The notes: generated from the sequence alone by a model not told the origin. A stretch of 64,000 bases of DNA from Salpingoeca rosetta (GCA_033442325.1 JAWQFM010000005.1:549327-613326); one strand, 5' to 3'. Positions 18,232 through 27,919 are shown, counted from the first letter of the stretch. Numbers and translations are program-made.

Positions 18232-19326
18232 CTAGTCAAAGCCAAGAAGGTCTGAGAGTGTCGTGGATGGGCTCATGACCATGGTGTAAGGCAGCTCGTC
18301 CTGCTTGCACTTCAACTCAAACAACGGCCCTCTCCTGCTCGACGGCGTCATGACCCCTCGCCACAGCGGCTGCTGCGTCGATGCCGCTGTTGTTCCTGCG
18401 CGGTCGCCGGTGCGCTTGCTCCGTTTCGCCGCCAGCTCACCGTTGTCGCCATCGTCGTCGTCACCACTTGTATCGCCAACGGGGCCGCGTGTGCCGTGCG
18501 CCTCCACGCAGGTCTCCGGCGCAGTGCCCAGTTCGCCTCGCAGCTCAGCCTCCAACTCCGCGCCGGGCACACCCGCGTCTTGCTGAGCGCTTGGAGGCAT
18601 TGAAGGGGTGTGTAACACGGGCAGGTTGCTTGTAACAGCCGCCCTGCTTGCTGCTGCTGCTGCTGCGCCTGGTATCGCTGCAGTTGCGGTTGTTGTTGCT
18701 GCTGTTGCTGATGCCGCTGGGATGCCGAGAAAGTCGTCATCGAGCACAAACCCTTGCACGGTGAACGGGTCAGTGTAACGCGCGCGCACGCAATTGAGGC
18801 CTTGGTCTGCGAGGAAGTTCTCCATGTCGAGGTTGACGGAGAGATGCATGTTGTCCACGGAAGGAATGAAGAAGGACAGGCCGTTGCGCAGCTTGTCGAC
18901 TTGCAGGAGGTCGGAGGCGGAAATGGTGCGGGCAGATGGGTGGTCCTTGAGGGCCTTGAACGCGTTGAGGGACTGTGTGAGGAGATCGTGCAGCTCGCGC
19001 TCCTTCTGTGACAGTGCGCGCACCTCGTCGTTGAGCCGGTTCTTCTTTGAGACAAAGTCTGGATCGGAGGTGTTGGCCACCAGCTGCACGTGGTACACGC
19101 GTGGCTGCACCTGCAGACGCTGGATCACGCCAATGCCCTCCAGGACATTGACCACATCCGACAATCGGCGACGCGAGAAATGAATGCCCAGGTTCTCCAG
19201 GTGCTGCTCGACGTCTGCAACGGACATGCGGCGGTCTGGCTGGTTCTTCAGGATGTGGATGAACTGCCGCGTGATGTTTGTCAGCGATTTGCCCTCCCGC
19301 TTCCCGGGCGTGGACGTCGCGGACAT
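18232..19326 (-). CDS. Divergent E2F-family transcription factor, intronless CDS
   Basis: KSLTNITRQFIHIL...RRRLSDVVNVLEGIGVI winged-helix signature; following coiled coil LNDEVRALSQKERELHDLL; C-terminal Y..M....TLSDLL resembling the E2F pocket-protein-binding motif. Confidence 0.85.
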   Translation of the reverse strand: MSATSTPGKREGKSLTNITRQFIHILKNQPDRRMSVADVEQHLENLGIHFSRRRLSDVVNVLEGIGVIQRLQVQPRVYHVQLVANTSDPDFVSKKNRLNDEVRALSQKERELHDLLTQSLNAFKALKDHPSARTISASDLLQVDKLRNGLSFFIPSVDNMHLSVNLDMENFLADQGLNCVRARYTDPFTVQGFVLDDDFLGIPAASATAATTTATAAIPGAAAAAASRAAVTSNLPVLHTPSMPPSAQQDAGVPGAELEAELRGELGTAPETCVEAHGTRGPVGDTSGDDDDGDNGELAAKRSKRTGDRAGTTAASTQQPLWRGVMTPSSRRGPLFELKCKQDELPYTMVMSPSTTLSDLLGFD

Positions 19327-20033
19327 GATGCCTTCGCAAGATGTGTGTGTGTGTGTGTGCGTGAGTGTGTGTGTGTTGTTGTGTGTGTGTGTGTGTTTGT
19401 GTGTGCGTGTGTGTGAAAGAGTGAGGGAGAGTTAGTGAGTGGGTGAGGGAGAGTTGTTGAGTGAGTGAGTGAGTGAGTGAGTGAGGGAGGGAGGGAGGGA
19501 GAAGAACAAGGAGAAGAACGTTGAGTTTGGGTATCATGCGTGCGTGTGCATGTCTAATCAATACAGAACGCAGGAGCGGCCGTTACACACCAATCGCCAA
19601 AAAGAACAGTCATCCACACACAGACACACTCACGAGTAACGACGAACCTCGTTGGCGTTGTTCGTTCCTTTGTCTCTAGTTCTTTCCCTTGTGGTGAACT
19701 CACGCCTCCCCTTGGGCTGTACCCAAGCAGAAGACAAGACAAGAGATAACTTGACCCTCACGCTCGACCCTCACTCAACTTGGTTCTTTGAACTTGTGGC
19801 GCTCTGGCTAGGGTGCTTCAAAGACCGCGGCGGTGATAATTTGTGGACATCTCACATGAAACCTCGAGCCTGTGAAATTTGTCGGGAATCTTTCGCCAAT
19901 TAACCAAGTGCGCGGCTTGCGTTGACCCCCACCACTGCCACAAGGAAAAGGTCTGATGCTGGAGGAGAGCGTGCCTTGCTTCTTGTGTTGTGCTGTATGC
20001 AGTGCGGGAACAACAGCACATGGAGTGTGAATG

Positions 20034-20096
<63 letters not shown>

Positions 20097-20341
20097 CCTT
20101 GTGTGGATCGTGTGGTCCTGCTTTGCTTGTTGGAAATTTGCAAGTCATTTCGGCTCACGCTCACTGAAATTCGTCCTCCTCCCTGCCTCTGTCCTCCTAC
20201 TCTCCATCAATCCCAACACACCACCTCATTGGTTTTTGTTGACACGCTTGCAGCTCCCTCATCAAGCCCAAACGACAAGAGCATTCGAAGTAGCTTGTGC
20301 CTTGTGTTTCTTCTTTGTTTCCAGAGAAACAGGGAACCACC

Positions 20342-20798
20342 ATGTCGCTTACGTCACTGAACCCGCGCGTGGCGCTCACAACCCGCCCACGCCGCGAAGG
20401 TCAGAGTCAGAGTCATCAAGTGTTCAGTTGCATGAGGGAGATCAACGCACATCCACCACGCAGCTCTCACTGTCTTGTCCTCCATGGGCTGGACTGTACG
20501 CATCAAACGCAATGGCGCTTGGAACACTGTTTTGTTCACACACGTGCACGCTCACACACACACGCACGCACATGCACGCACACGCACATGCACACTCCTA
20601 TCCTTTGCATGAATCTGCACTTCAGGTGAGACGGATGGTATCCACTATCATTTCGTTTCGCGCGACGAGTTTGAGCGCCTCCTTGCCGCCGATGCTTTCA
20701 TGGAGCACGGCGAGTACAAGGGCAACCTGTACGGCACTCTCAAGCGCAGCGCAAGCTCCTATGCTCAGCCCACGTCTCCCACCGCCAACGTGCGTTTC

Positions 20799-20882
<84 letters not shown>

Positions 20883-21312
20883 GTTGCAGCAGCGTATTGC
20901 GAATAGCGTGTGTGCTTCCGAAGAAGGGCGCATTGGAAGCGAACTCGCTGCCACCCTTGCTGCCACTCCGCAGTGTCGCGTCAACGACCTCATGCAACAT
21001 GCTCCCTGCACGCATTCTGACCAACACACGCTCAAACATGTCGGCATGATAGGGTGTTGACCAGAGCCTGTACAAGCTGCAGACGGTGATCCTGCATCGT
21101 GGCGAAAACGGCAGCTTCAACGTCGCCCTCTCCGGTGGTGTGAGCAACAAGCGCCTCATCAGCGTGGCCGGTGTTCTTGACGGCGCCGTTCAGCTCGCCT
21201 ACACCGCTCGTCCTCTCCGCAAGGTGTGTGTGTATGTGTGTTGCTGTGTTTATGCATGTTTACGTGTATATATGCGTATGGGACAGAGAGACAGGGTTTA
21301 TGTATGTGAGTG

Positions 21313-21393
<81 letters not shown>

Positions 21394-21408
21394 TGCTCGC
21401 TCGCTCCG

Positions 21409-21445
<37 letters not shown>

Positions 21446-24175
21446 GTCATCGAGCTTGGATGTTGGCAGCCGCAACGCCTGTGTGCTTGTTGCATTGTTC
21501 ACTGACAAACCCGCCCACTCATGCATGCTGCAACAACCACAATCCCGCCACCAACAACTAGGGCGACTGCATCATTGCCATTGACGGGCAGTCTGTTGGC
21601 GGCGTCCCGCTCGAGGACGTGCAGCAGCTCATGCGCACCGCAGGCCCTGCCGTGGAGCTTCTTGTCTACTGCATGGATGGTGAGGTGGACTCCGACTACA
21701 CCCTGCTCTCAAACTTCCTCCGCAGCAACAGCACAGACTCTGCCGAGCTTGCAGCCGTCAAGGCCGACATCAGGTGCGTTTGCCCTTGCGTTGTTGTTGT
21801 TTTTTTTTTTTTTTTTGGCGCCACTGCAACAGTTGCAGCAGTTGCATGTCTATCATCAACGTGCCATGCTTGATATAGGTCCTCGTGTTACTTGATATCA
21901 GTGCCCTTTCTTTTGCCGCACCTGCGCTTGCCCTTTCCTTGTTGTTCTTTTCGCCATTCTCACTCACACGCACACCCACAAACGCACACCCACACCCACA
22001 AACGCACACCCACACACGCACACAAATACACACACACGCGCACACACACTCTCTGTCTCTCAGGGCGGATGTGTATGGCGCCTCTGTCCCGTACACCACT
22101 CGTGCGCCACGCGAGGGCGAGGTGGAGGGCGTCAACTACCACTTTGTGACGCGCGACGACTTTGAGGCCATGGTCAAGGGCGACCGCTTTGTCGAGTGGG
22201 GCGAGGCCAACGGCGTGATGTACGGCACCCCCAAGCGCAAGCCGGGTGCATCTGTGCGCCGCGTGCCATCGTCAAGCACGGACGGCCCCGCCGACGCCGA
22301 CGTCGCCTCTGGAGAGGACAGCGCCAACGCCCGCCCGTCGCTCCGCCGCTCGCAGGCACACGCGGCCTCTGTCAGGGCCACCAGCCGGCCCCGCGCCATC
22401 ACCATCAAGCACGCCGGGCCATTCTCCTCCATGGGCCTCGAGCTCACGCAGACCCGCGACGGCGTGTTTGTGCTGGATGTGGTTGACGGCTCACCCGCCG
22501 CGGCTGCGGGCCTGTCCAAGGCCATGCAGGTGCTCGCCGTCGACGGGGTCGATGCTTCCGGCAAGGACGCCGCCTTTGTCCGCAACCGCCTTGGCCAGGT
22601 CGCAGACGAGCATGAGCTTGTTGTCCGCTACAACACCCGCGCCTTCTCCTCCGCCGCAGCGGTGAGTCGTGTGTGTGTGTGTGTCTGTGTCTGTGTCTGC
22701 GTCTGTGTCTGTGTGATGTTTGTGTGTATGTGTGTTTGTCTGTGTTGTTTGTCTGTGTGTCTATTTATCCGTGGGTCTCTCCTCCTCTTCTTCTCCACAG
22801 CTGCTCAATTTACTTAACGGCTGTGTTCAATCCCTCCCTCCCTCCCTGACTTCCCCAAACCAAATTGCGCATGCATGCCCTTTCTACATCTGCCAGACGC
22901 TGATTGGCGGCACGAAGAAGGAGCACATCTTCACTGCCGTTCTCGGCCGCAACGGCAGCGGCCGCTGGGGCATCAGCATCGGCGGCGGCGCGGAGCAGGG
23001 CCGCCTCATTGTCTTTGAGAAGCTCGAGGATGTCCACTACATCGCCAAGACGCGCACCATCGCCGAGGGCGACTGCCTGCTGGCTGTTGACGGCGTCTCC
23101 GTTGCCGGCAGCGGCCTCGCGCACGCCGTGGAGCAGATCAAGAAGGCGGACCAGGACATTGAGCTGACTGTGCTCAGCACCGCAGACACGGCCGTGTCCT
23201 CCAACCTCGACGACTTCTTCCTCGCATCCAAGTACGACAGCGCCGCGCTCGCTGCTGCCAAGGCCGACATCCGCGCCAGCGTGTACGACTCCACGGTCGC
23301 CTACACCACGCGCGCGCCACGCGAGGGCGAGAAGGACGGCGTCAACTACCACTTTGTCACGGAGGACACCTTCAAGGACATGATCAACGCGGGCTCCTTC
23401 TTGGAGTGGGGCGAGCGCGACGGCGTGTACTACGGCACGCCAAAGGCCTTCAGCCCGCGCAAGAGCCGCCGCGCGTCGCGTGCCCGCCGCGCCATCTCCA
23501 CCGTCACCACCGCCGTGCAGACGGTCGTCATTGCCCGTCTTTCCGACGGCACGTGGGGCGTGGAGATTGCCGGCGGCCTCAGCCACGGCGTCCTGCCGCA
23601 CGTCTCTGCCGTGTCGGACAACTGCAACATGGTTGCCTTCTCGGAGCGGCCGCTGCTTCCTGGCGACGTCATCCTGGCCGTGCAGGGCGTGAGCATTGCG
23701 GGCTTTGACCTCGGCTACATCAAGCGGCTCATGGACGCGCAGGGCGACGAGGTTGAGCTCACCGTCATGTGCACCAACAGCACCCGCCCCACCAGCTTCC
23801 GCGCCCTCCTCTCCCACAGCAACGGCCAGAACCTGCCCGAGGATCTGCAGACAGTTGTGGAGGATGTCCGCAGCGACATTTACAAGTCCACGGTCCCCTT
23901 CACCACGCGTGCACCGCGTCAGGGGGAGAAGGACGGCGTCGACTACCACTTTGTCACGGAGGAGGAGTTTAGGCGCATGGAGAAGGAGGGCAAGTTCATT
24001 GAGGTTGGCGAGAGCAACGGCGTGCTGTACGGCACAGCTGCCCAGTCCAAGTCCAGCTTCCAGCCGCGTTCCTCCCGCACCCGCCGCCGCCTCAGCACCC
24101 GCTCCCGATTCAGCCGCCCTCGCATGTTTGTCATCCACGCAGACGACAATGAGGTCTGTCCCTGCGCGTTCGCCC

Positions 24176-24214
<39 letters not shown>

Positions 24215-26063
24215 TGTGTGTGGGTGTGTGTGGGTGTGTGCGCGTACTTGCGTGCGTGTGTGCATTTGTATTTGCGCATGTGCCGCGGCGTACTTCTATT
24301 TGGGTGACGCAGCTTCTTCTCCGTGTTCTTCTTGTTTTCTATTGATACATGCACACGTTCACATTTCATTGTGCTCACCGCATTCGCCTCCTTTCTCCGA
24401 CTCCTGCCTTTATAGTCTGTCGGCCTCAGCCTTTCCGCCATTGCGCCTGGTGCTGGCGGCGGTGTTGAGGTGACGACCACCGATGTTGGCAAGCCCGCGC
24501 ACCGCGCTGGCCTCCGTGCAGGCATGAAGCTCCTGACGGTCGAGGGCGAGCCCGTGGAGCAGAAGGACGTCAACGACGTGGCACAGATGCTTCTTGACCC
24601 GTTCAGGCAGAAGGGCAGCGTCAGCCTCACCGCTTGCTACGCCCCAGCCACCAAGCTGGTACGCGCACTGGCACTCAAGTCTTGATTGCTTTCTGGGGCC
24701 CTGGTCTTGCGTTGCGTCAATGTAATTGTTCACATCAATGTAATTGTTTGCACTGTCATCACACTTACCCTCAGTCACTCACGTGTACCCTATGGCTCTT
24801 CCTCCTGCCTCATCCTTCGCACACTACTTCTACGCCTGCCTCTTTCCGCTTTACCCCCTCCCGCTCCCTGCTCCCCTTCGCCGCCGTTGCTCCCATTTCT
24901 GCCACATAGATGGCCAACGTGACCGTGCCTGTGTTTGATGAGCCTGACAACACCACCGCCGACGACGATGAGCAGACACACGTCCACTTCATTGGCTCTG
25001 AGCAGATTGATGACAACAAAGTCCGCATCATTCAGACGTGGGCATGCCCGCGCTCCCTCTCCACAGCGCTCATGTACTCCTTTGCACAACGATCGGACAC
25101 AACAGTGGTGAGTGCATCGTGTGTGTGTGTGTGTGTGCGTGTGTGTCTGTGTGTCTGTGTGTCTGTGTGTCTGTGTGTAACTGTGCTCGCTTGCGTGGTA
25201 TGTATATTTGTGTGCGTGTGTGTGTGTGTGTGTGTGATGCCGTGCGCACTGTGGGGGAATTTACCCCGCAATCGGCACGCAACATCATTGAGTGCCCCTT
25301 CGCTGCATCTTTGTGTCGTGTGCTCACACGTGCCACCGCTGCCTGCTACACCATCGCGACTCCTGTCCCTATCCTTCTCTCGTCCACCACGCTTGTTTTG
25401 CATGTTCCTGGCTGCGTTGACTCGACCACCAGCGTGACGAGCCCTTTTACGGGTCGTTCCTGCACAAGAACCCGCACCTGAACCACCCCATGCAGGACGA
25501 GGTCATTGCGTCGCAGCCAACAAACCCGGCCGAGGTGGTGCAGTCCATTCTCGCACACACATCCACGCAAGTGCTGTACTGCAAGAACCTGGTCAAGCAC
25601 ATGCCAACAGACGTCGACGATGACGACGCCTGGCTCAGCCGCTGCGTGCACATCTTCCAGTTCCGCAACCCTGCCGCCGTTGTGTCCTCGTTCAAGAACT
25701 TTGCCAAGCCAACTGCGGACGAGACGTGCTTCCCGCAGGCACACGCCCTCATGACCAAGCTCAGGGAACGCAACATCCCCTTCTGCGTCGTCGACTCTGA
25801 CGCGCTGACCATCAACCCGGAGGCCGTGCTGCGCCAGCTGTGCCATGGCCTTGGCATCAGCTTTGACGAGGCCATGCTGTCCTGGCCGGCGGGGCCAAAG
25901 GAGTACGATGGCGTCTGGGCGTCTGAGTGGTACAAGACCGTCCATTCCTCCACCGGCTTTATGGTCCGTGATTTCTGTTTTTTTTTTTGTGTGTGTGTGT
26001 ATTTGTATGTGTATGCGTCTGTGTGTGTATGTGTGGTTGTGTGTGTGTGTGTGTATTTGTATT

Positions 26064-26095
<32 letters not shown>

Positions 26096-27544
26096 GCTGT
26101 GTGTAGCTGTGTGTGGCTGTCTGTCTGTGTGTAAGGTCCCATTCAGCTCACATGACCACATCCCATCAATTCCCCTCTCCCCACAAACAGCCGAGCAAGT
26201 CGATGCACACTGTCGATGCCGCGCTGTTGCCTCTGATTCGCGACGCGTATCCGTTCTACCTCGCCCTCTCCCAGCACGCAATCGGCCATGGCATGTCGCC
26301 TTCCATGTCAGTGGCCTTCACACGCACTTGCCTGTTTGTTTTCTTTGCTCTTCACTCACACACCCATTTGAGTTGTCATTTGCTCCGGCTATGCTCGTCG
26401 ACCCGCACCTTACCGACTTACGTCATCGACTCCCCTTCCACATTCCATACACATACGTATTCATGCGCGTGCTCGTGTGGCGCATTAGGCTGAAAAACGC
26501 CAGCACCGACGACCTTGCGGCACCAGAGCTGCCTGACGCGCGCAACGAGAACGTGCTTGTGTGGGTTGGCCGCGGCCTTGTGCCCCGCGCCTTTGCGTCC
26601 CTGTCCGTGTTTGACTCTGCGGTGCAGGGCGGTGACGCCGTGTGGGAGGGCCTGCGCGTGTACAACGGCAAGGCGTTCCGCCTGGACCAGCATGTGCAAC
26701 GCCTCATTGACTCTGCCAAGGCAATGGCCTTTGATGACATTCCATCCCCGGAAGACATCAAGGTCTGTGCATGTATGTGTGTGCCTGTTGTGCGCGCGCG
26801 TGTGTGTCTTTTGTGCGTGTGTGTTTATGTGCCTTTTGTGCGCGTGTGTGTCTTTTTTGCGCTGAGCTGACTGCGGTTCACGTGCACTGTAATTCAGGTG
26901 CGCTGCGATGCTCGCAACACTCGTATTGTCAACGACAACCGTGGTTTGTCACACCCTCTCAACCCCCTTCCCTGTCTCACGCCCCCCTCCCACCCTTTAC
27001 TGCTTCACCTGACCACAGGAGACAATCTTCAAGACGCTGGCTGCCAACAACATGCGCGATGGCGTGCACGTGCGCATCACCCTGTCCCGTGGTGCGAAGG
27101 TCACCTCCAGCATGAACCCGGCCTTCAACCAGTCTGGCTCCGTGCTTGTCGTCCTTCCAGAGTTCAAGGGCGTGCAGGGCGCTGCCACCTACAACAACGT
27201 GGATGGCGTGAAGCTCATCACTGCCGCCAACCGCCGCAACTCGCCCCAGTGCCTCGACTCGAAGATCCACCACTGCAACCTCATCAACAACATCCTGCCC
27301 AAGATCCAGGCCAACGCTGCTGGCGCCGCAGACGCCATTATGCTTGACCTCGACGGCTTTGTTGCCGAGACCAACGCCACCAACCTGTTTGCAGTCAAGG
27401 GCGGCGCCGTCCTCACGCCCTCTGCCGACTACTGCCTGCCCGGTGTCACGCGCGCTGTTGTGATTGAGCTGGCCGAGAAGCTCCAGCTGCCTCTGCAGAT
27501 CCGCCGCGTCTCCCTCGCCGAGTTCCACGCTGCCGACGAGGTAC

Positions 27545-27575
<31 letters not shown>

Positions 27576-27919
27576 CTGTGTACTTGCGTGTGTAAGTGTG
27601 TGTGTGTGGGTGTGTGCGTGCTTGTGCGTTATTTAGTCTGCGCGTCTCTTCTGTGTGTGTGTGTGTGTGTGTATCAGCTGCGTGCATGTGCTCATTTTGG
27701 CATCTCCGTGCCGTCTTTCCTTATGCATCAACATCCCCCCCCCCTGTGCCTTGTCTTCTCCGCTAGGTGTTCACGACTGGCACGATGGGTGAGCTCACCC
27801 CCGTCATTGCCATTGACGGCCGCGCCATTGGCTCTGGTGCCCGCGGGCCGATCACGGAGCGCATCCAGGCCGCTTTCCACGACCTCACAGAGGCCGAGGG
27901 CGAGCAGCTGCCGTTCTAA
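20342..27919 (+). CDS. Multi-exon protein: 4 MAGI-type guanylate-kinase-like segments and 5 PDZ domains, followed (probably in the same transcript) by a sulfotransferase-like P-loop domain and a class IV aminotransferase-like (BCAT-like) domain
   Basis: Four TTR(P/A)(R/P)R.GE...Y.FV...F.E.GE..G..YGT motifs (~20378-20745, 22063-22240, 23262-23445, 23865-24035); PDZ motifs [27 protein letters not shown]; [15 protein letters not shown]; [49 protein letters not shown]; stop TAA 27917-27919. Domain calls are firm, the fusion junction less so. Confidence 0.8.

What the first reader, a model, noticed from the sequence alone, without database searches (positions are those of the whole stretch)
24640..24930. 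Signalling scaffold apparently spliced in frame onto a sulfotransferase-like/aminotransferase-like enzyme
Seen: the last PDZ exon ends APATKL/GTACGC (donor 24659), followed by a pyrimidine-rich stretch ending TAG/ATGGCC (acceptor 24908-24909), phase 0 on both sides, giving one reading frame from GuK1 to the aminotransferase stop at 27919. Knowledge: the sulfotransferase-like plus class IV aminotransferase pair is known from plant BCAT-like proteins; I know of no fusion to PDZ/GuK repeats. Inference: an enzyme tethered to a cortical scaffold. Alternative: two genes 225 bp apart (stop 24685, ATG 24910).
Basis: partly seen in the sequence, partly recalled or inferred. Interest (0 to 1): 0.8.

Follow-up and report, generated by a model that had tools for sequence, protein, structure and literature searches.

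The report
Scaffold-enzyme fusion gene, really spliced
RNA reads show that the PDZ/guanylate-kinase-like scaffold and the sulfotransferase-like/aminotransferase-like enzyme are one spliced gene in this choanoflagellate. The 1498-residue product is already the public Salpingoeca rosetta gene model and is conserved in two other choanoflagellates, but nobody seems to have studied it.

Summary
The exon ends at 24658, GT lies at 24659-60, AG at 24908-09 and ATG at 24910, with phase 0 on both sides.

The 251-nt interval is a true intron.
- Two stranded RNA-seq runs give 29 and 14 junction reads.
- Spliced contigs from two further studies carry the same joint.
- Depth is zero across 24754-24875, and no cluster of molecule starts or ends lies between the stop at 24685 and the ATG.

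My 13-exon model (20342-27919) is identical to the public 1498-aa [quoted passage not shown].

Co-linear full-length orthologues exist in Hartaetosiga balthica (1449 aa) and Salpingoeca infusionum (1426 aa). Two metagenomic relatives are also fused. The fused forms group together next to stand-alone enzymes of S. urceolata and S. macrocollata.

The N-terminal 900 residues are not a MAGUK. They hold four copies of only the GMP-binding lobe of guanylate kinase, alternating with five PDZ domains.

In the enzyme half, the first domain has a sulfotransferase fold. The second, PLP-type domain has His where the canonical catalytic Lys sits.

The fusion is real and conserved. Its function, and any "cortical" location, remain inferred. 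Interest is moderate.

The parts
20342..27919 (+). Whole coding region: 13 exons, 1498 codons plus stop. Exons: 20342-20399, 20626-20789, 21053-21223, 21562-21773, 22064-22661, 22897-24153, 24416-24658, 24910-25107, 25433-25963, 26191-26306, 26489-26762, 27019-27540, 27767-27919.
   Evidence: Model built from the sequence; all introns are GT..AG. The translation is identical over 1498 residues to public protein P0153, 'branched-chain-amino-acid aminotransferase-like protein 2 [Salpingoeca rosetta]'.
24416..24658 (+). Exon 7, which carries most of PDZ5 and ends ...APATKL (residue 901).
   Evidence: Pfam PDZ_6 and PDZ hits. Junction reads at both of its ends.
24659..24909 (+). Intron 7 (251 nt, GTACGC...CACATAG, phase 0): the interval in question. 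It holds the in-frame TGA at 24683-24685 and a 14-nt direct repeat TCAATGTAATTGTT at 24717-24730 and 24735-24748.
   Evidence: Skipped by 29 (X21) and 14 (X22) reads and by the X8 and X6 contigs. Depth is 0 in 24754-24875. Repeat found.
24910..25107 (+). Exon 8: a 40-residue acidic linker (MANVTV...DDNKV, residues 902-941), then the start of Sulfotransfer_5 (WACPRSLST motif).
   Evidence: Pfam profile position 3 begins at residue 41 of this exon. M902 is not conserved in the orthologues.
20369..20750 (+). GuK-let 1 (residues 10-61, split by intron 1).
   Evidence: Pfam Guanylate_kin profile 34-85 of 182; motif listing.
22071..22232 (+). GuK-let 2 (residues 205-258), with Pro211 at the s36P site.
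23281..23442 (+). GuK-let 3 (residues 530-583).
   Evidence: AF2 model pLDDT is about 87-90 and the fold matches the GMP-binding lobe.
23878..24039 (+). GuK-let 4 (residues 729-782).
   Evidence: Pfam profile 26-84 of 182.
21086..21666 (+). PDZ1 (residues 86-166, split by intron 3).
   Evidence: Pfam PDZ profile 2-80 of 81.
22392..22634 (+). PDZ2 (residues about 312-392).
   Evidence: Pfam PDZ_2 and PDZ hits, marginal scores.
22921..23775 (+). PDZ3 (residues 410-494) and PDZ4 (residues 607-694), flanking GuK-let 3.
   Evidence: Pfam. The PDZ4 model matches solved PDZ domains.
25030..26274 (+). Sulfotransfer_5 domain (residues 942-1172, exons 8-10).
   Evidence: Pfam 168 bits, profile 3-224 of 226. 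AF2 pLDDT 95.7; best fold matches are TPST1/2, the CurM and olefin-synthase ST domains, and 3-OST.
26640..27814 (+). Aminotran_4 (fold-type IV PLP) domain, residues 1234-1464. Lys1356 is encoded at 27262-27264 and His1358 at 27268-27270.
   Evidence: Pfam 165 bits, profile 2-223 of 223. PDB relatives 7z79 and 5mqz at E 4e-65 to 5e-62. Alignment of the lysine position.

Best explanation
This is one gene of Salpingoeca rosetta, and 24659-24909 is an ordinary, efficiently removed phase-0 intron. The mRNA encodes a single 1498-residue protein.

Shown:
- Residues 1-901 form a modular binding array. Four 'GuK-lets' alternate with five PDZ domains. Each GuK-let is only the roughly 55-residue GMP/phosphopeptide-binding lobe of guanylate kinase, without the P-loop core or the lid.
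- Residues 902-941 are a variable acidic linker.
- Residues 942-1498 are a member of the widespread but uncharacterised 'BCAT-like' enzyme family. It has a sulfotransferase-fold domain (Sulfotransfer_5) followed by a fold-type IV PLP-type domain.
- The fusion arose within one clade of choanoflagellate enzymes and has been kept in at least three cultured species and two uncultured relatives.

Inferred (about 0.4):
- The N-terminal array acts as a multivalent adaptor. The PDZ domains would bind C-terminal peptides.
- The GuK-lets keep the phosphate-binding Arg/Tyr/Glu residues and mostly carry the Pro typical of protein-binding GK domains. They would bind phosphorylated or other anionic ligands.
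- The array would therefore either place the enzyme at particular protein complexes or bring substrates to it.
- The chemistry of the enzyme half is unknown. The sulfotransferase domain keeps all family-conserved positions. The PLP-type domain has His at the canonical catalytic Lys position and a conserved Lys two residues earlier, so it may not be a standard transaminase.
For: Splice:
- 43 junction reads in two stranded RNA runs, plus spliced contigs in two other studies.
- Zero depth in the intron, similar depth on both flanking exons, and no loose ends at the 24910 acceptor.

Gene model:
- The window translation equals the public 1498-aa protein.

Conservation:
- End-to-end co-linear alignment with the H. 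balthica 1449-aa ORF (43% identity) and the S. infusionum 1426-aa ORF (47% identity). Both are transcriptome ORFs marked 'complete'.
- The metagenomic P0002 has five GuK-lets, then ST5, then the start of AT4.
- P0007 has the end of a GuK-let, then a PDZ-like stretch, then the enzyme.
- In the enzyme tree the three cultured fused forms are a clade (99/91). P0002 joins them at 91/82 and P0007 at 85/84. All sit inside a 98/98 clade with the stand-alone S. urceolata and S. macrocollata enzymes.

Domains:
- Pfam results.
- GuK-lets cover only profile positions about 26-85 of 182 and align to residues 27-80 of yeast guanylate kinase. The residues aligning with the yeast GMP-contact residues R38, R41, E44, Y50, E69, Y78 and S80 (recalled from the yeast structure literature) are kept in the four S. 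rosetta units, with Thr at the S80 position, and in most units of the relatives.
- Pro211 aligns with the Pro of 4f4j, which PMC4718807 identifies as the yeast gk S36P mutant.
- In the AF2 model the GuK-let core has pLDDT 87-90 and superposes on the GK lobe at 0.8-1.0 A over 50-51 columns.
- The ST5 model has pLDDT 95.7 and matches PAPS sulfotransferases.
Against: - No protein-level data. The 165-kDa product could be cleaved in the linker.
- The laid stretch covered only 23900-25700, so a single molecule from exon 1 to exon 13 is inferred from the contigs, the public model and the orthologues. It was not read directly.
- A few X21 reads in the minor direction reach into 24693-24753. Four X21 reads leave the 24658 donor for a sequence that is not in the window. 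Rare alternative products therefore cannot be excluded.
- Ligands of the PDZ domains and GuK-lets are unknown, and isolated GK binding lobes have not been shown to bind anything.
- The enzyme family has no characterised member that I could find.
Confidence: 0.9

Rival explanations
1. Two separate genes: the scaffold gene ends at TGA 24685, and an independent enzyme gene starts at ATG 24910 with its own promoter in the 224-nt gap.
For: The in-frame stop lies 27 nt past the donor, and an ATG sits exactly at the acceptor. Stand-alone enzymes of 555-568 aa exist in other choanoflagellates and start a few residues before the same WxxPRSxST motif.
Against: Depth is zero in 24754-24875. No cluster of starts or ends lies in the gap. 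There are 43 junction reads and two spliced contigs. M902 is not conserved. Fused ORFs are found in two other species.
Confidence: 0.02
2. The fused mRNA is real, but the protein is a precursor. The acidic linker (residues 902-941) is cut, releasing a free enzyme and a free scaffold, so the fusion only ensures co-expression.
For: The linker is the least conserved and most length-variable segment of the alignment. Stand-alone enzymes work without an N-terminal array in related species.
Against: No protease site or processing domain was recognised. Three independent kinds of N-terminal fusion to this enzyme exist: GuK-let/PDZ, DSPc phosphatase in P0114, and PF10294 in plants. This suggests that physical linkage itself is useful.
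Confidence: 0.08
3. The N-terminal array is not an adaptor for other proteins. It is a sensor or regulatory module for small anionic ligands, such as GMP, other nucleotides, or the PAP/PAPS used by the sulfotransferase domain, which controls or feeds the enzyme half.
For: The residues that align with the GMP-phosphate and guanine contacts of yeast guanylate kinase (recalled from the structure literature) are kept in the four S. rosetta units and most others. P0002 keeps five GuK-lets but no PDZ in front of the enzyme, so the GuK-let, not the PDZ, is the constant partner. By sequence the GuK-lets score higher against gk enzymes than against Dlg GK domains.
Against: Most units have Pro (or Ala) at site 36. 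In full GK domains this abolishes catalysis and favours peptide binding (PMC4718807). Units 3 and 4 also have Ser at the f33S site. In the enzyme, part of the GMP site comes from the core lobe, which is absent here.
Confidence: 0.2

Closest known systems
Plant and algal 'branched-chain-amino-acid aminotransferase-like proteins 1/2' (Sulfotransfer_5 + Aminotran_4, about 555 aa), for example the Nymphaea, Arabidopsis lyrata, Physcomitrium and Ectocarpus entries
   Same: Same two domains in the same order. The C-terminal domain is 61% identical to Nymphaea, and the 'LDSKIHHxNLxNNILxKI' segment is nearly identical to Nymphaea's.
   Different: These proteins start a few residues before the sulfotransferase motif. 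The window's protein carries 900 extra N-terminal residues of GuK-lets and PDZ domains.
Orthologous fused ORFs of Hartaetosiga balthica (EP00055_P017504, 1449 aa) and Salpingoeca infusionum (EP00049_P018196, 1426 aa)
   Same: Co-linear over the whole length, with the same order of four GuK-lets, the PDZ domains, ST5 and AT4.
   Different: 43-47% identity. The linker at the fusion point differs in length and has no Met. H. balthica has Lys at the canonical catalytic position and a very long branch.
MAGUK scaffolds (Dlg/PSD-95, MPP, MAGI) and their GK protein-interaction domain
   Same: They combine PDZ domains with guanylate-kinase-derived, catalytically dead binding modules. They have Pro at site 36 and conserved phosphate-binding Arg/Tyr.
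   Different: No SH3. No complete GK domain, since only the binding lobe is present, repeated four times. An enzyme sits at the C-terminus.
Fold-type IV protein 7z79 ('Aminotransferase, class 4') and the archaeal BCATs 5mqz and 5e25
   Same: Best solved relatives of the C-terminal domain (E 4e-65 to 2e-60), aligned over the whole length.
   Different: The archaeal BCATs have the Schiff-base Lys (IKSLNYL) where the window's protein has His1358. 7z79 has Asn there, and 9j32 differs from it only by Lys at that place.
PAPS-dependent sulfotransferases (TPST1/2, CurM and olefin-synthase ST domains, heparan sulfate 3-OST)
   Same: Best structural matches of the ST5 model (Foldseek E 1e-8 to 1e-4, TM about 0.55-0.61).
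   Different: 12-19% identity, and no significant sequence match to any solved structure. Substrate unknown.

Membership tests
BCAT-like protein family (Sulfotransfer_5 + Aminotran_4) | Full-length Sulfotransfer_5 domain | tested here: met
   Residues 942-1172, profile 3-224 of 226, 168 bits against a cut-off of 23.2. All 13 columns invariant across 54 family members (for example D, E, P and Y of DEPFY, and the Asp, Gly and both Trp of 'DGVWASEW') are kept in the reference sequence.
BCAT-like protein family (Sulfotransfer_5 + Aminotran_4) | Full-length Aminotran_4 domain C-terminal to it in the same polypeptide | tested here: met
   Residues 1234-1464, profile 2-223 of 223, 165 bits. It nests among family members in the tree.
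Canonical fold-type IV transaminase (BCAT / D-AAT) | Schiff-base lysine at the conserved position | tested here: not met
   The Lys of IKSLNYL in 5mqz and 5e25 aligns with His1358. Lys1356 lies two residues upstream. The same 'DSKIHH' is found in S. infusionum, Nymphaea, P0007 and P0118. Whether Lys1356 can take over could not be tested.
Canonical fold-type IV transaminase (BCAT / D-AAT) | Conserved Glu of the 'G-x-V-x-E' segment, which contacts the PLP ring nitrogen in BCATs (role from general knowledge) | tested here: met
   Query '[12 protein letters not shown]' aligns Glu with the Glu of 'GYVSEGSGDNIF' in 5mqz.
PAPS-dependent sulfotransferase | Sulfotransferase fold | tested here: met
   AF2 model with pLDDT 95.7. 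The top 26 PDB matches are all PAPS-dependent sulfotransferases, the best being TPST1/2 and the CurM and olefin-synthase ST domains.
PAPS-dependent sulfotransferase | 5'-phosphosulfate loop and 3'-phosphate motif contacting PAPS | tested here: inconclusive
   The family-conserved 'PRxxST' (CPRSLST here) and 'RxP...S' ([10 protein letters not shown] here) are present. Their equivalence to the PAPS-binding motifs is my inference from sequence pattern and was not checked on coordinates.
MAGUK | PDZ + SH3 + complete GK domain | tested here: not met
   No SH3 hit. Each of the four Guanylate_kin stretches covers only profile positions about 26-85 of 182.
GK protein-interaction domain (GK-PID) | Pro at site 36 (historical substitution s36P) with retained phosphate-binding residues | tested here: met
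   Units 2 and 4 have VPYTTR and VPFTTR. Units 1 and 3 have Ala there. Pro211 aligns with the Pro of 4f4j, the S36P mutant.
GK protein-interaction domain (GK-PID) | Two-lobed GK fold (core and lid lobes present) | tested here: not met
   Only about 50 residues superpose on GK structures: 3ney at rmsd 1.0 over 50 columns and 9j8l at 0.8 over 51. The units are flanked by a helix and a basic linker, not by core strands.
PDZ domain | PDZ profile match and fold | tested here: met
   Five regions hit PDZ-clan profiles; PDZ2 is below the curated cut-offs, and PDZ4 and PDZ5 pass only the PDZ_6 cut-off. The PDZ4 model matches solved PDZ domains with TM up to 0.78 relative to the target.

The most novel reading that the evidence does not exclude
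The GuK-let, the isolated GMP/phosphopeptide-binding lobe of guanylate kinase, is an independently folding, repeatable ligand-binding module. It forms arrays of four to seven copies in choanoflagellates and uncultured relatives. In this gene it couples phospho-signalling to a sulfotransferase/PLP enzyme of unknown chemistry, possibly one that acts on proteins or peptides, given that its nearest structural matches are tyrosylprotein sulfotransferases. That would be a second, non-MAGUK route by which the GK binding surface was recruited for protein interaction near the origin of animals.
Probability: 0.25. Interest if true: 0.65.

Novelty: new variant of a known kind. Interest (0 to 1): 0.4.

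Why it matters
The splice itself is not a discovery, because it is already the public gene model. What remains unexplored is the protein. It is a conserved choanoflagellate fusion of a peptide/phospho-ligand-binding array to a member of a very widespread enzyme family (plants, algae, protists, bacteria), none of whose members has, as far as I could find, a known reaction.

Two things follow:
- The fusion partners give a functional hint for that orphan family: regulation or targeting through signalling-type modules. A dual-specificity phosphatase domain is fused at the same place in another organism.
- The lobe-only GuK repeats bear on how the guanylate-kinase binding surface became a protein-interaction module in the lineage leading to animals.

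S. rosetta is genetically tractable, so these ideas can be tested.

Tried and rejected
- **Two-gene model.** Rejected by the laid reads.
- **Minor isoform leaving the 24658 donor.** Four X21 reads continue with ATGCCCAAAGGAAGAGGCCGAG. This sequence is absent from the 64-kb window at up to 3 mismatches, and it shares only chance 10-mers with it. It is left unexplained.
- **Alternative acceptor for exon 6** (22801 instead of 22897, also in frame). Rejected because the orthologues lack the extra 32 residues and the public protein uses 22897.
- **Bacterial promoter/terminator scan of the interval.** It found nothing and is not appropriate for a eukaryote.
- **Earlier findings of the scan.** None at this place.
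- **Literature.** No paper holds choanoflagellate + guanylate kinase + PDZ + aminotransferase. Papers that mention Sulfotransfer_5 or PF19798 only list the family. No paper was found on 7z79, and none on a fold-type IV protein lacking the catalytic lysine.
- **Sequence search of the ST5 domain against solved structures.** Only non-significant hits; the fold search was needed.
- **The window's own protein in the representative search.** It did not appear and was found only through the S. infusionum orthologue. Absence from that list is therefore not evidence of absence; for example, nothing can be said about Monosiga brevicollis.

Full report

- The frame of exon 24416-24658 ends ...GCC ACC AAG CTG (APATKL) at 24658.
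- GTACGC follows at 24659.
- If the frame is read on, it stops at TGA 24683-24685.
- A C/T-rich tract ends in CACATAG at 24909, and ATG GCC AAC begins at 24910.
- Both sides are phase 0, and the intron would be 251 nt.

Pfam confirms the domain content on both sides. Upstream there are Guanylate_kin fragments and PDZ domains. Downstream, the Sulfotransfer_5 profile starts at position 3, at residue 41 after the ATG, and Aminotran_4 follows.

**2. Intron or intergenic spacer?**

I laid two raw, stranded RNA-seq runs of 2026 (X21, X22) and the assembled contigs of two older runs (X8 from 2011, X6 from 2024) on 23900-25700. These come from three studies.
- The joint 24658^24910 (skips 251 nt, GT..AG) is seen in 29 reads at 19 start places in X21 and in 14 reads at 7 start places in X22.
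- The same joint is in the single contig of each older run. Those contigs also lack introns 24154-24415 and 25108-25432, so they are cDNA.
- The upstream neighbour intron has 7 and 10 junction reads in the same runs, so the questioned intron is spliced at least as efficiently.
- Depth is 0 in 24754-24875 in all runs, and 0 in the main direction in 24693-24753.
- Depth is similar on the two flanking exons: 16-22 against 16-29 in X21, and 10-15 against 9-16 in X22.
- No cluster of molecule starts or ends lies in 24685-24910, and no loose ends are reported at the 24910 acceptor.

Minor residue remains. A few X21 reads in the minor direction extend to about 24750. Four X21 reads leave the donor for a 22-nt sequence that is not in the window.

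**3. The whole gene**

Linking the open stretches through GT..AG introns gives 13 exons from ATG 20342 to TAA 27919, encoding 1498 residues. This translation is identical, residue for residue, to a public protein named 'branched-chain-amino-acid aminotransferase-like protein 2 [Salpingoeca rosetta]', held by NCBI, UniRef and EukProt.

So the window is S. rosetta, and the fused model is already the reference annotation. I found no paper that describes the architecture.

**4. Conservation**

An exhaustive HMMER search with the sulfotransferase exon gave, as its best hit, a 1449-aa protein with the domain at 934-1106. This is a 'complete' transcriptome ORF of Hartaetosiga balthica. A 1426-aa 'complete' ORF of Salpingoeca infusionum followed. 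Both align co-linearly with the window's protein from the first GuK-let to the C-terminus, at 43% and 47% identity. The linker at the fusion point is the most variable part, and Met902 is not conserved.

Two metagenomic relatives are also fused.
- P0002 has five GuK-lets, no PDZ, then ST5 and the start of AT4. Its contig has CA-repeat intron-like sequence.
- P0007 is partial: the end of a GuK-let, a PDZ-like stretch, then the enzyme.

Stand-alone 555-568-aa enzymes exist in Diaphanoeca grandis, S. urceolata and S. macrocollata, and very widely in plants, algae and other protists, with compact 539-aa forms on long metagenomic contigs.

I built a maximum-likelihood tree of the enzyme part from 31 rows chosen from about 600 hits. 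It is midpoint-rooted for drawing only.
- The three cultured fused forms are a clade (99/91).
- P0002 joins them at 91/82, and then P0007 at 85/84.
- All of these sit within a 98/98 clade that also holds the stand-alone S. urceolata and S. macrocollata proteins.
- The H. balthica branch is very long (2.05), so its exact place is unsure.

The simplest reading is one fusion event inside craspedid choanoflagellates, with the GuK-let as the constant partner.

**5. The N-terminal half**

It is not a MAGUK. There is no SH3, and each of the four Guanylate_kin matches covers only profile positions about 26-85 of 182.

These 'GuK-lets' align to residues 27-80 of yeast guanylate kinase. The residues that align with the yeast GMP-contact residues R38, R41, E44, Y50, E69, Y78 and S80 are kept in the four S. 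rosetta units, with Thr at the S80 position, and in most units of the four organisms. The identity of those contact residues is my recollection of the yeast structure literature.

The best solved match is 4f4j. Anderson et al. (PMC4718807) identify this entry as the yeast S36P mutant, and Pro211 of unit 2 aligns with that Pro. Units 2 and 4 have Pro and units 1 and 3 have Ala at this site. Units 3 and 4 also have Ser at the f33S site. In full GK domains these changes abolish catalysis and confer peptide binding (PMC4718807).

An AF2 model of residues 500-700 gives the GuK-let core a pLDDT of 87-90 as a beta-beta-alpha-beta-beta unit. It superposes on the GK binding lobe at 0.8-1.0 A over 50-51 columns. 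The following PDZ4 matches solved PDZ domains.

Five PDZ regions are detected; PDZ2 scores below the curated cut-offs, and PDZ4 and PDZ5 pass only the PDZ_6 cut-off. Four of the five have a hydrophobic-Gly-hydrophobic carboxylate-binding loop (MGLEL, WGISI, WGVEI, VGLSL), read directly from the sequence.

Proteins of 1200-1400 aa with five to seven tandem GuK-lets and no other recognised domain occur in metagenomes.

**6. The enzyme half**

The ST5 domain keeps all 13 columns that are invariant across 54 family members, and the family's highly conserved motifs. Its AF2 model (pLDDT 95.7) matches PAPS-dependent sulfotransferases best: TPST1/2, then the CurM and olefin-synthase ST domains, then 3-OST. 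No significant sequence match to a solved structure exists.

The C-terminal domain is a full-length fold-type IV domain (E 4e-65 to 7z79, 5e-62 to 5mqz). However, the Schiff-base Lys of the archaeal BCATs (IKSLNYL) aligns with His1358, and Lys1356 lies two residues earlier.
- The same 'DSKIHH' occurs in S. infusionum, Nymphaea and two metagenomic members, so it is a family trait under strong conservation and not local decay.
- H. balthica has Lys at the canonical place.
- More distant members, and 7z79, have Asn.

The name 'aminotransferase' is therefore unproven for this family.

**7. Mechanism**

Shown: one mRNA, one open reading frame, a conserved architecture, and folds as described above.

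Inferred: the array of PDZ domains and GuK-lets acts as a multivalent adaptor that positions the enzyme or recruits its substrates. I give this about 0.4. The rivals are a small-ligand sensing role for the GuK-lets (0.2) and post-translational separation of the two halves (0.08).

Other organisms fuse a dual-specificity phosphatase domain (P0114) or a PF10294 methyltransferase-like domain (plants) to the same enzyme. This suggests that N-terminal regulatory or targeting add-ons are a recurring theme for this family. Nothing supports a specifically cortical location.

**8. Verdict**

The splice is already annotated, so the new content is descriptive:
- a conserved, unstudied fusion;
- lobe-only GK repeats;
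- a non-canonical lysine position in an orphan enzyme family.

Interest is moderate (0.4).

Noticed in passing
window 27262-27270 (Lys1356, Ile1357, His1358): In the PLP-type domain, the position of the canonical catalytic lysine of fold-type IV enzymes is His, with a Lys two residues upstream. The motif DSKIHH is shared with S. infusionum, a water-lily BCAT-like protein and metagenomic members. H. balthica has Lys at the canonical place, and 7z79 has Asn.
   Followed up: partly
proteins P0154-P0159 (metagenomic, 1195-1403 aa): A wider family of proteins built of five to seven tandem lobe-only guanylate-kinase fragments at a period of about 130 residues, with no other Pfam domain detected. Their organisms are unknown.
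   Followed up: partly
L001:333-2873 (protein P0002, ENA metagenome contig): A relative with five GuK-lets directly in front of the sulfotransferase-like domain and no PDZ. The called N-terminus reads through CA-repeat sequence, so the gene call probably starts inside an intron.
   Followed up: partly
proteins P0114, P0152, P0204, P0292: Other N-terminal additions to the same two-domain enzyme: a dual-specificity phosphatase domain in a metagenomic protein, and a PF10294 domain in several plant entries of 920-1007 aa.
   Followed up: no
window 24658 (donor), run X21: Four reads continue after the donor with ATGCCCAAAGGAAGAGGCCGAG, which is not in the 64-kb window. This could be a rare alternative or chimeric product.
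   Followed up: partly
window 24717-24748: An exact 14-nt direct repeat TCAATGTAATTGTT, 18 nt apart, inside intron 7. A few minor-direction X21 reads end in this neighbourhood.
   Followed up: no
window 20035-20100, 20800-20880, 21310-21445, 24169-24248, 25112-25243, 25975-26130, 27548-27675: Many introns of this gene and its 5' leader carry long (TG)n or (CT)n microsatellites. The read tool skipped two of them as repeats.
   Followed up: no
window 18300-19400: A GC-rich (0.65-0.70) stretch upstream of the gene whose plus-strand frames look like the antisense of coding sequence. This is probably a divergently transcribed neighbour on the minus strand.
   Followed up: no
protein P0001 (H. balthica), enzyme part: A very long terminal branch (2.05 changes per column against a median of 0.42) in the enzyme tree, together with a different lysine motif. 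The enzyme half may be evolving under different constraints in that species.
   Followed up: no
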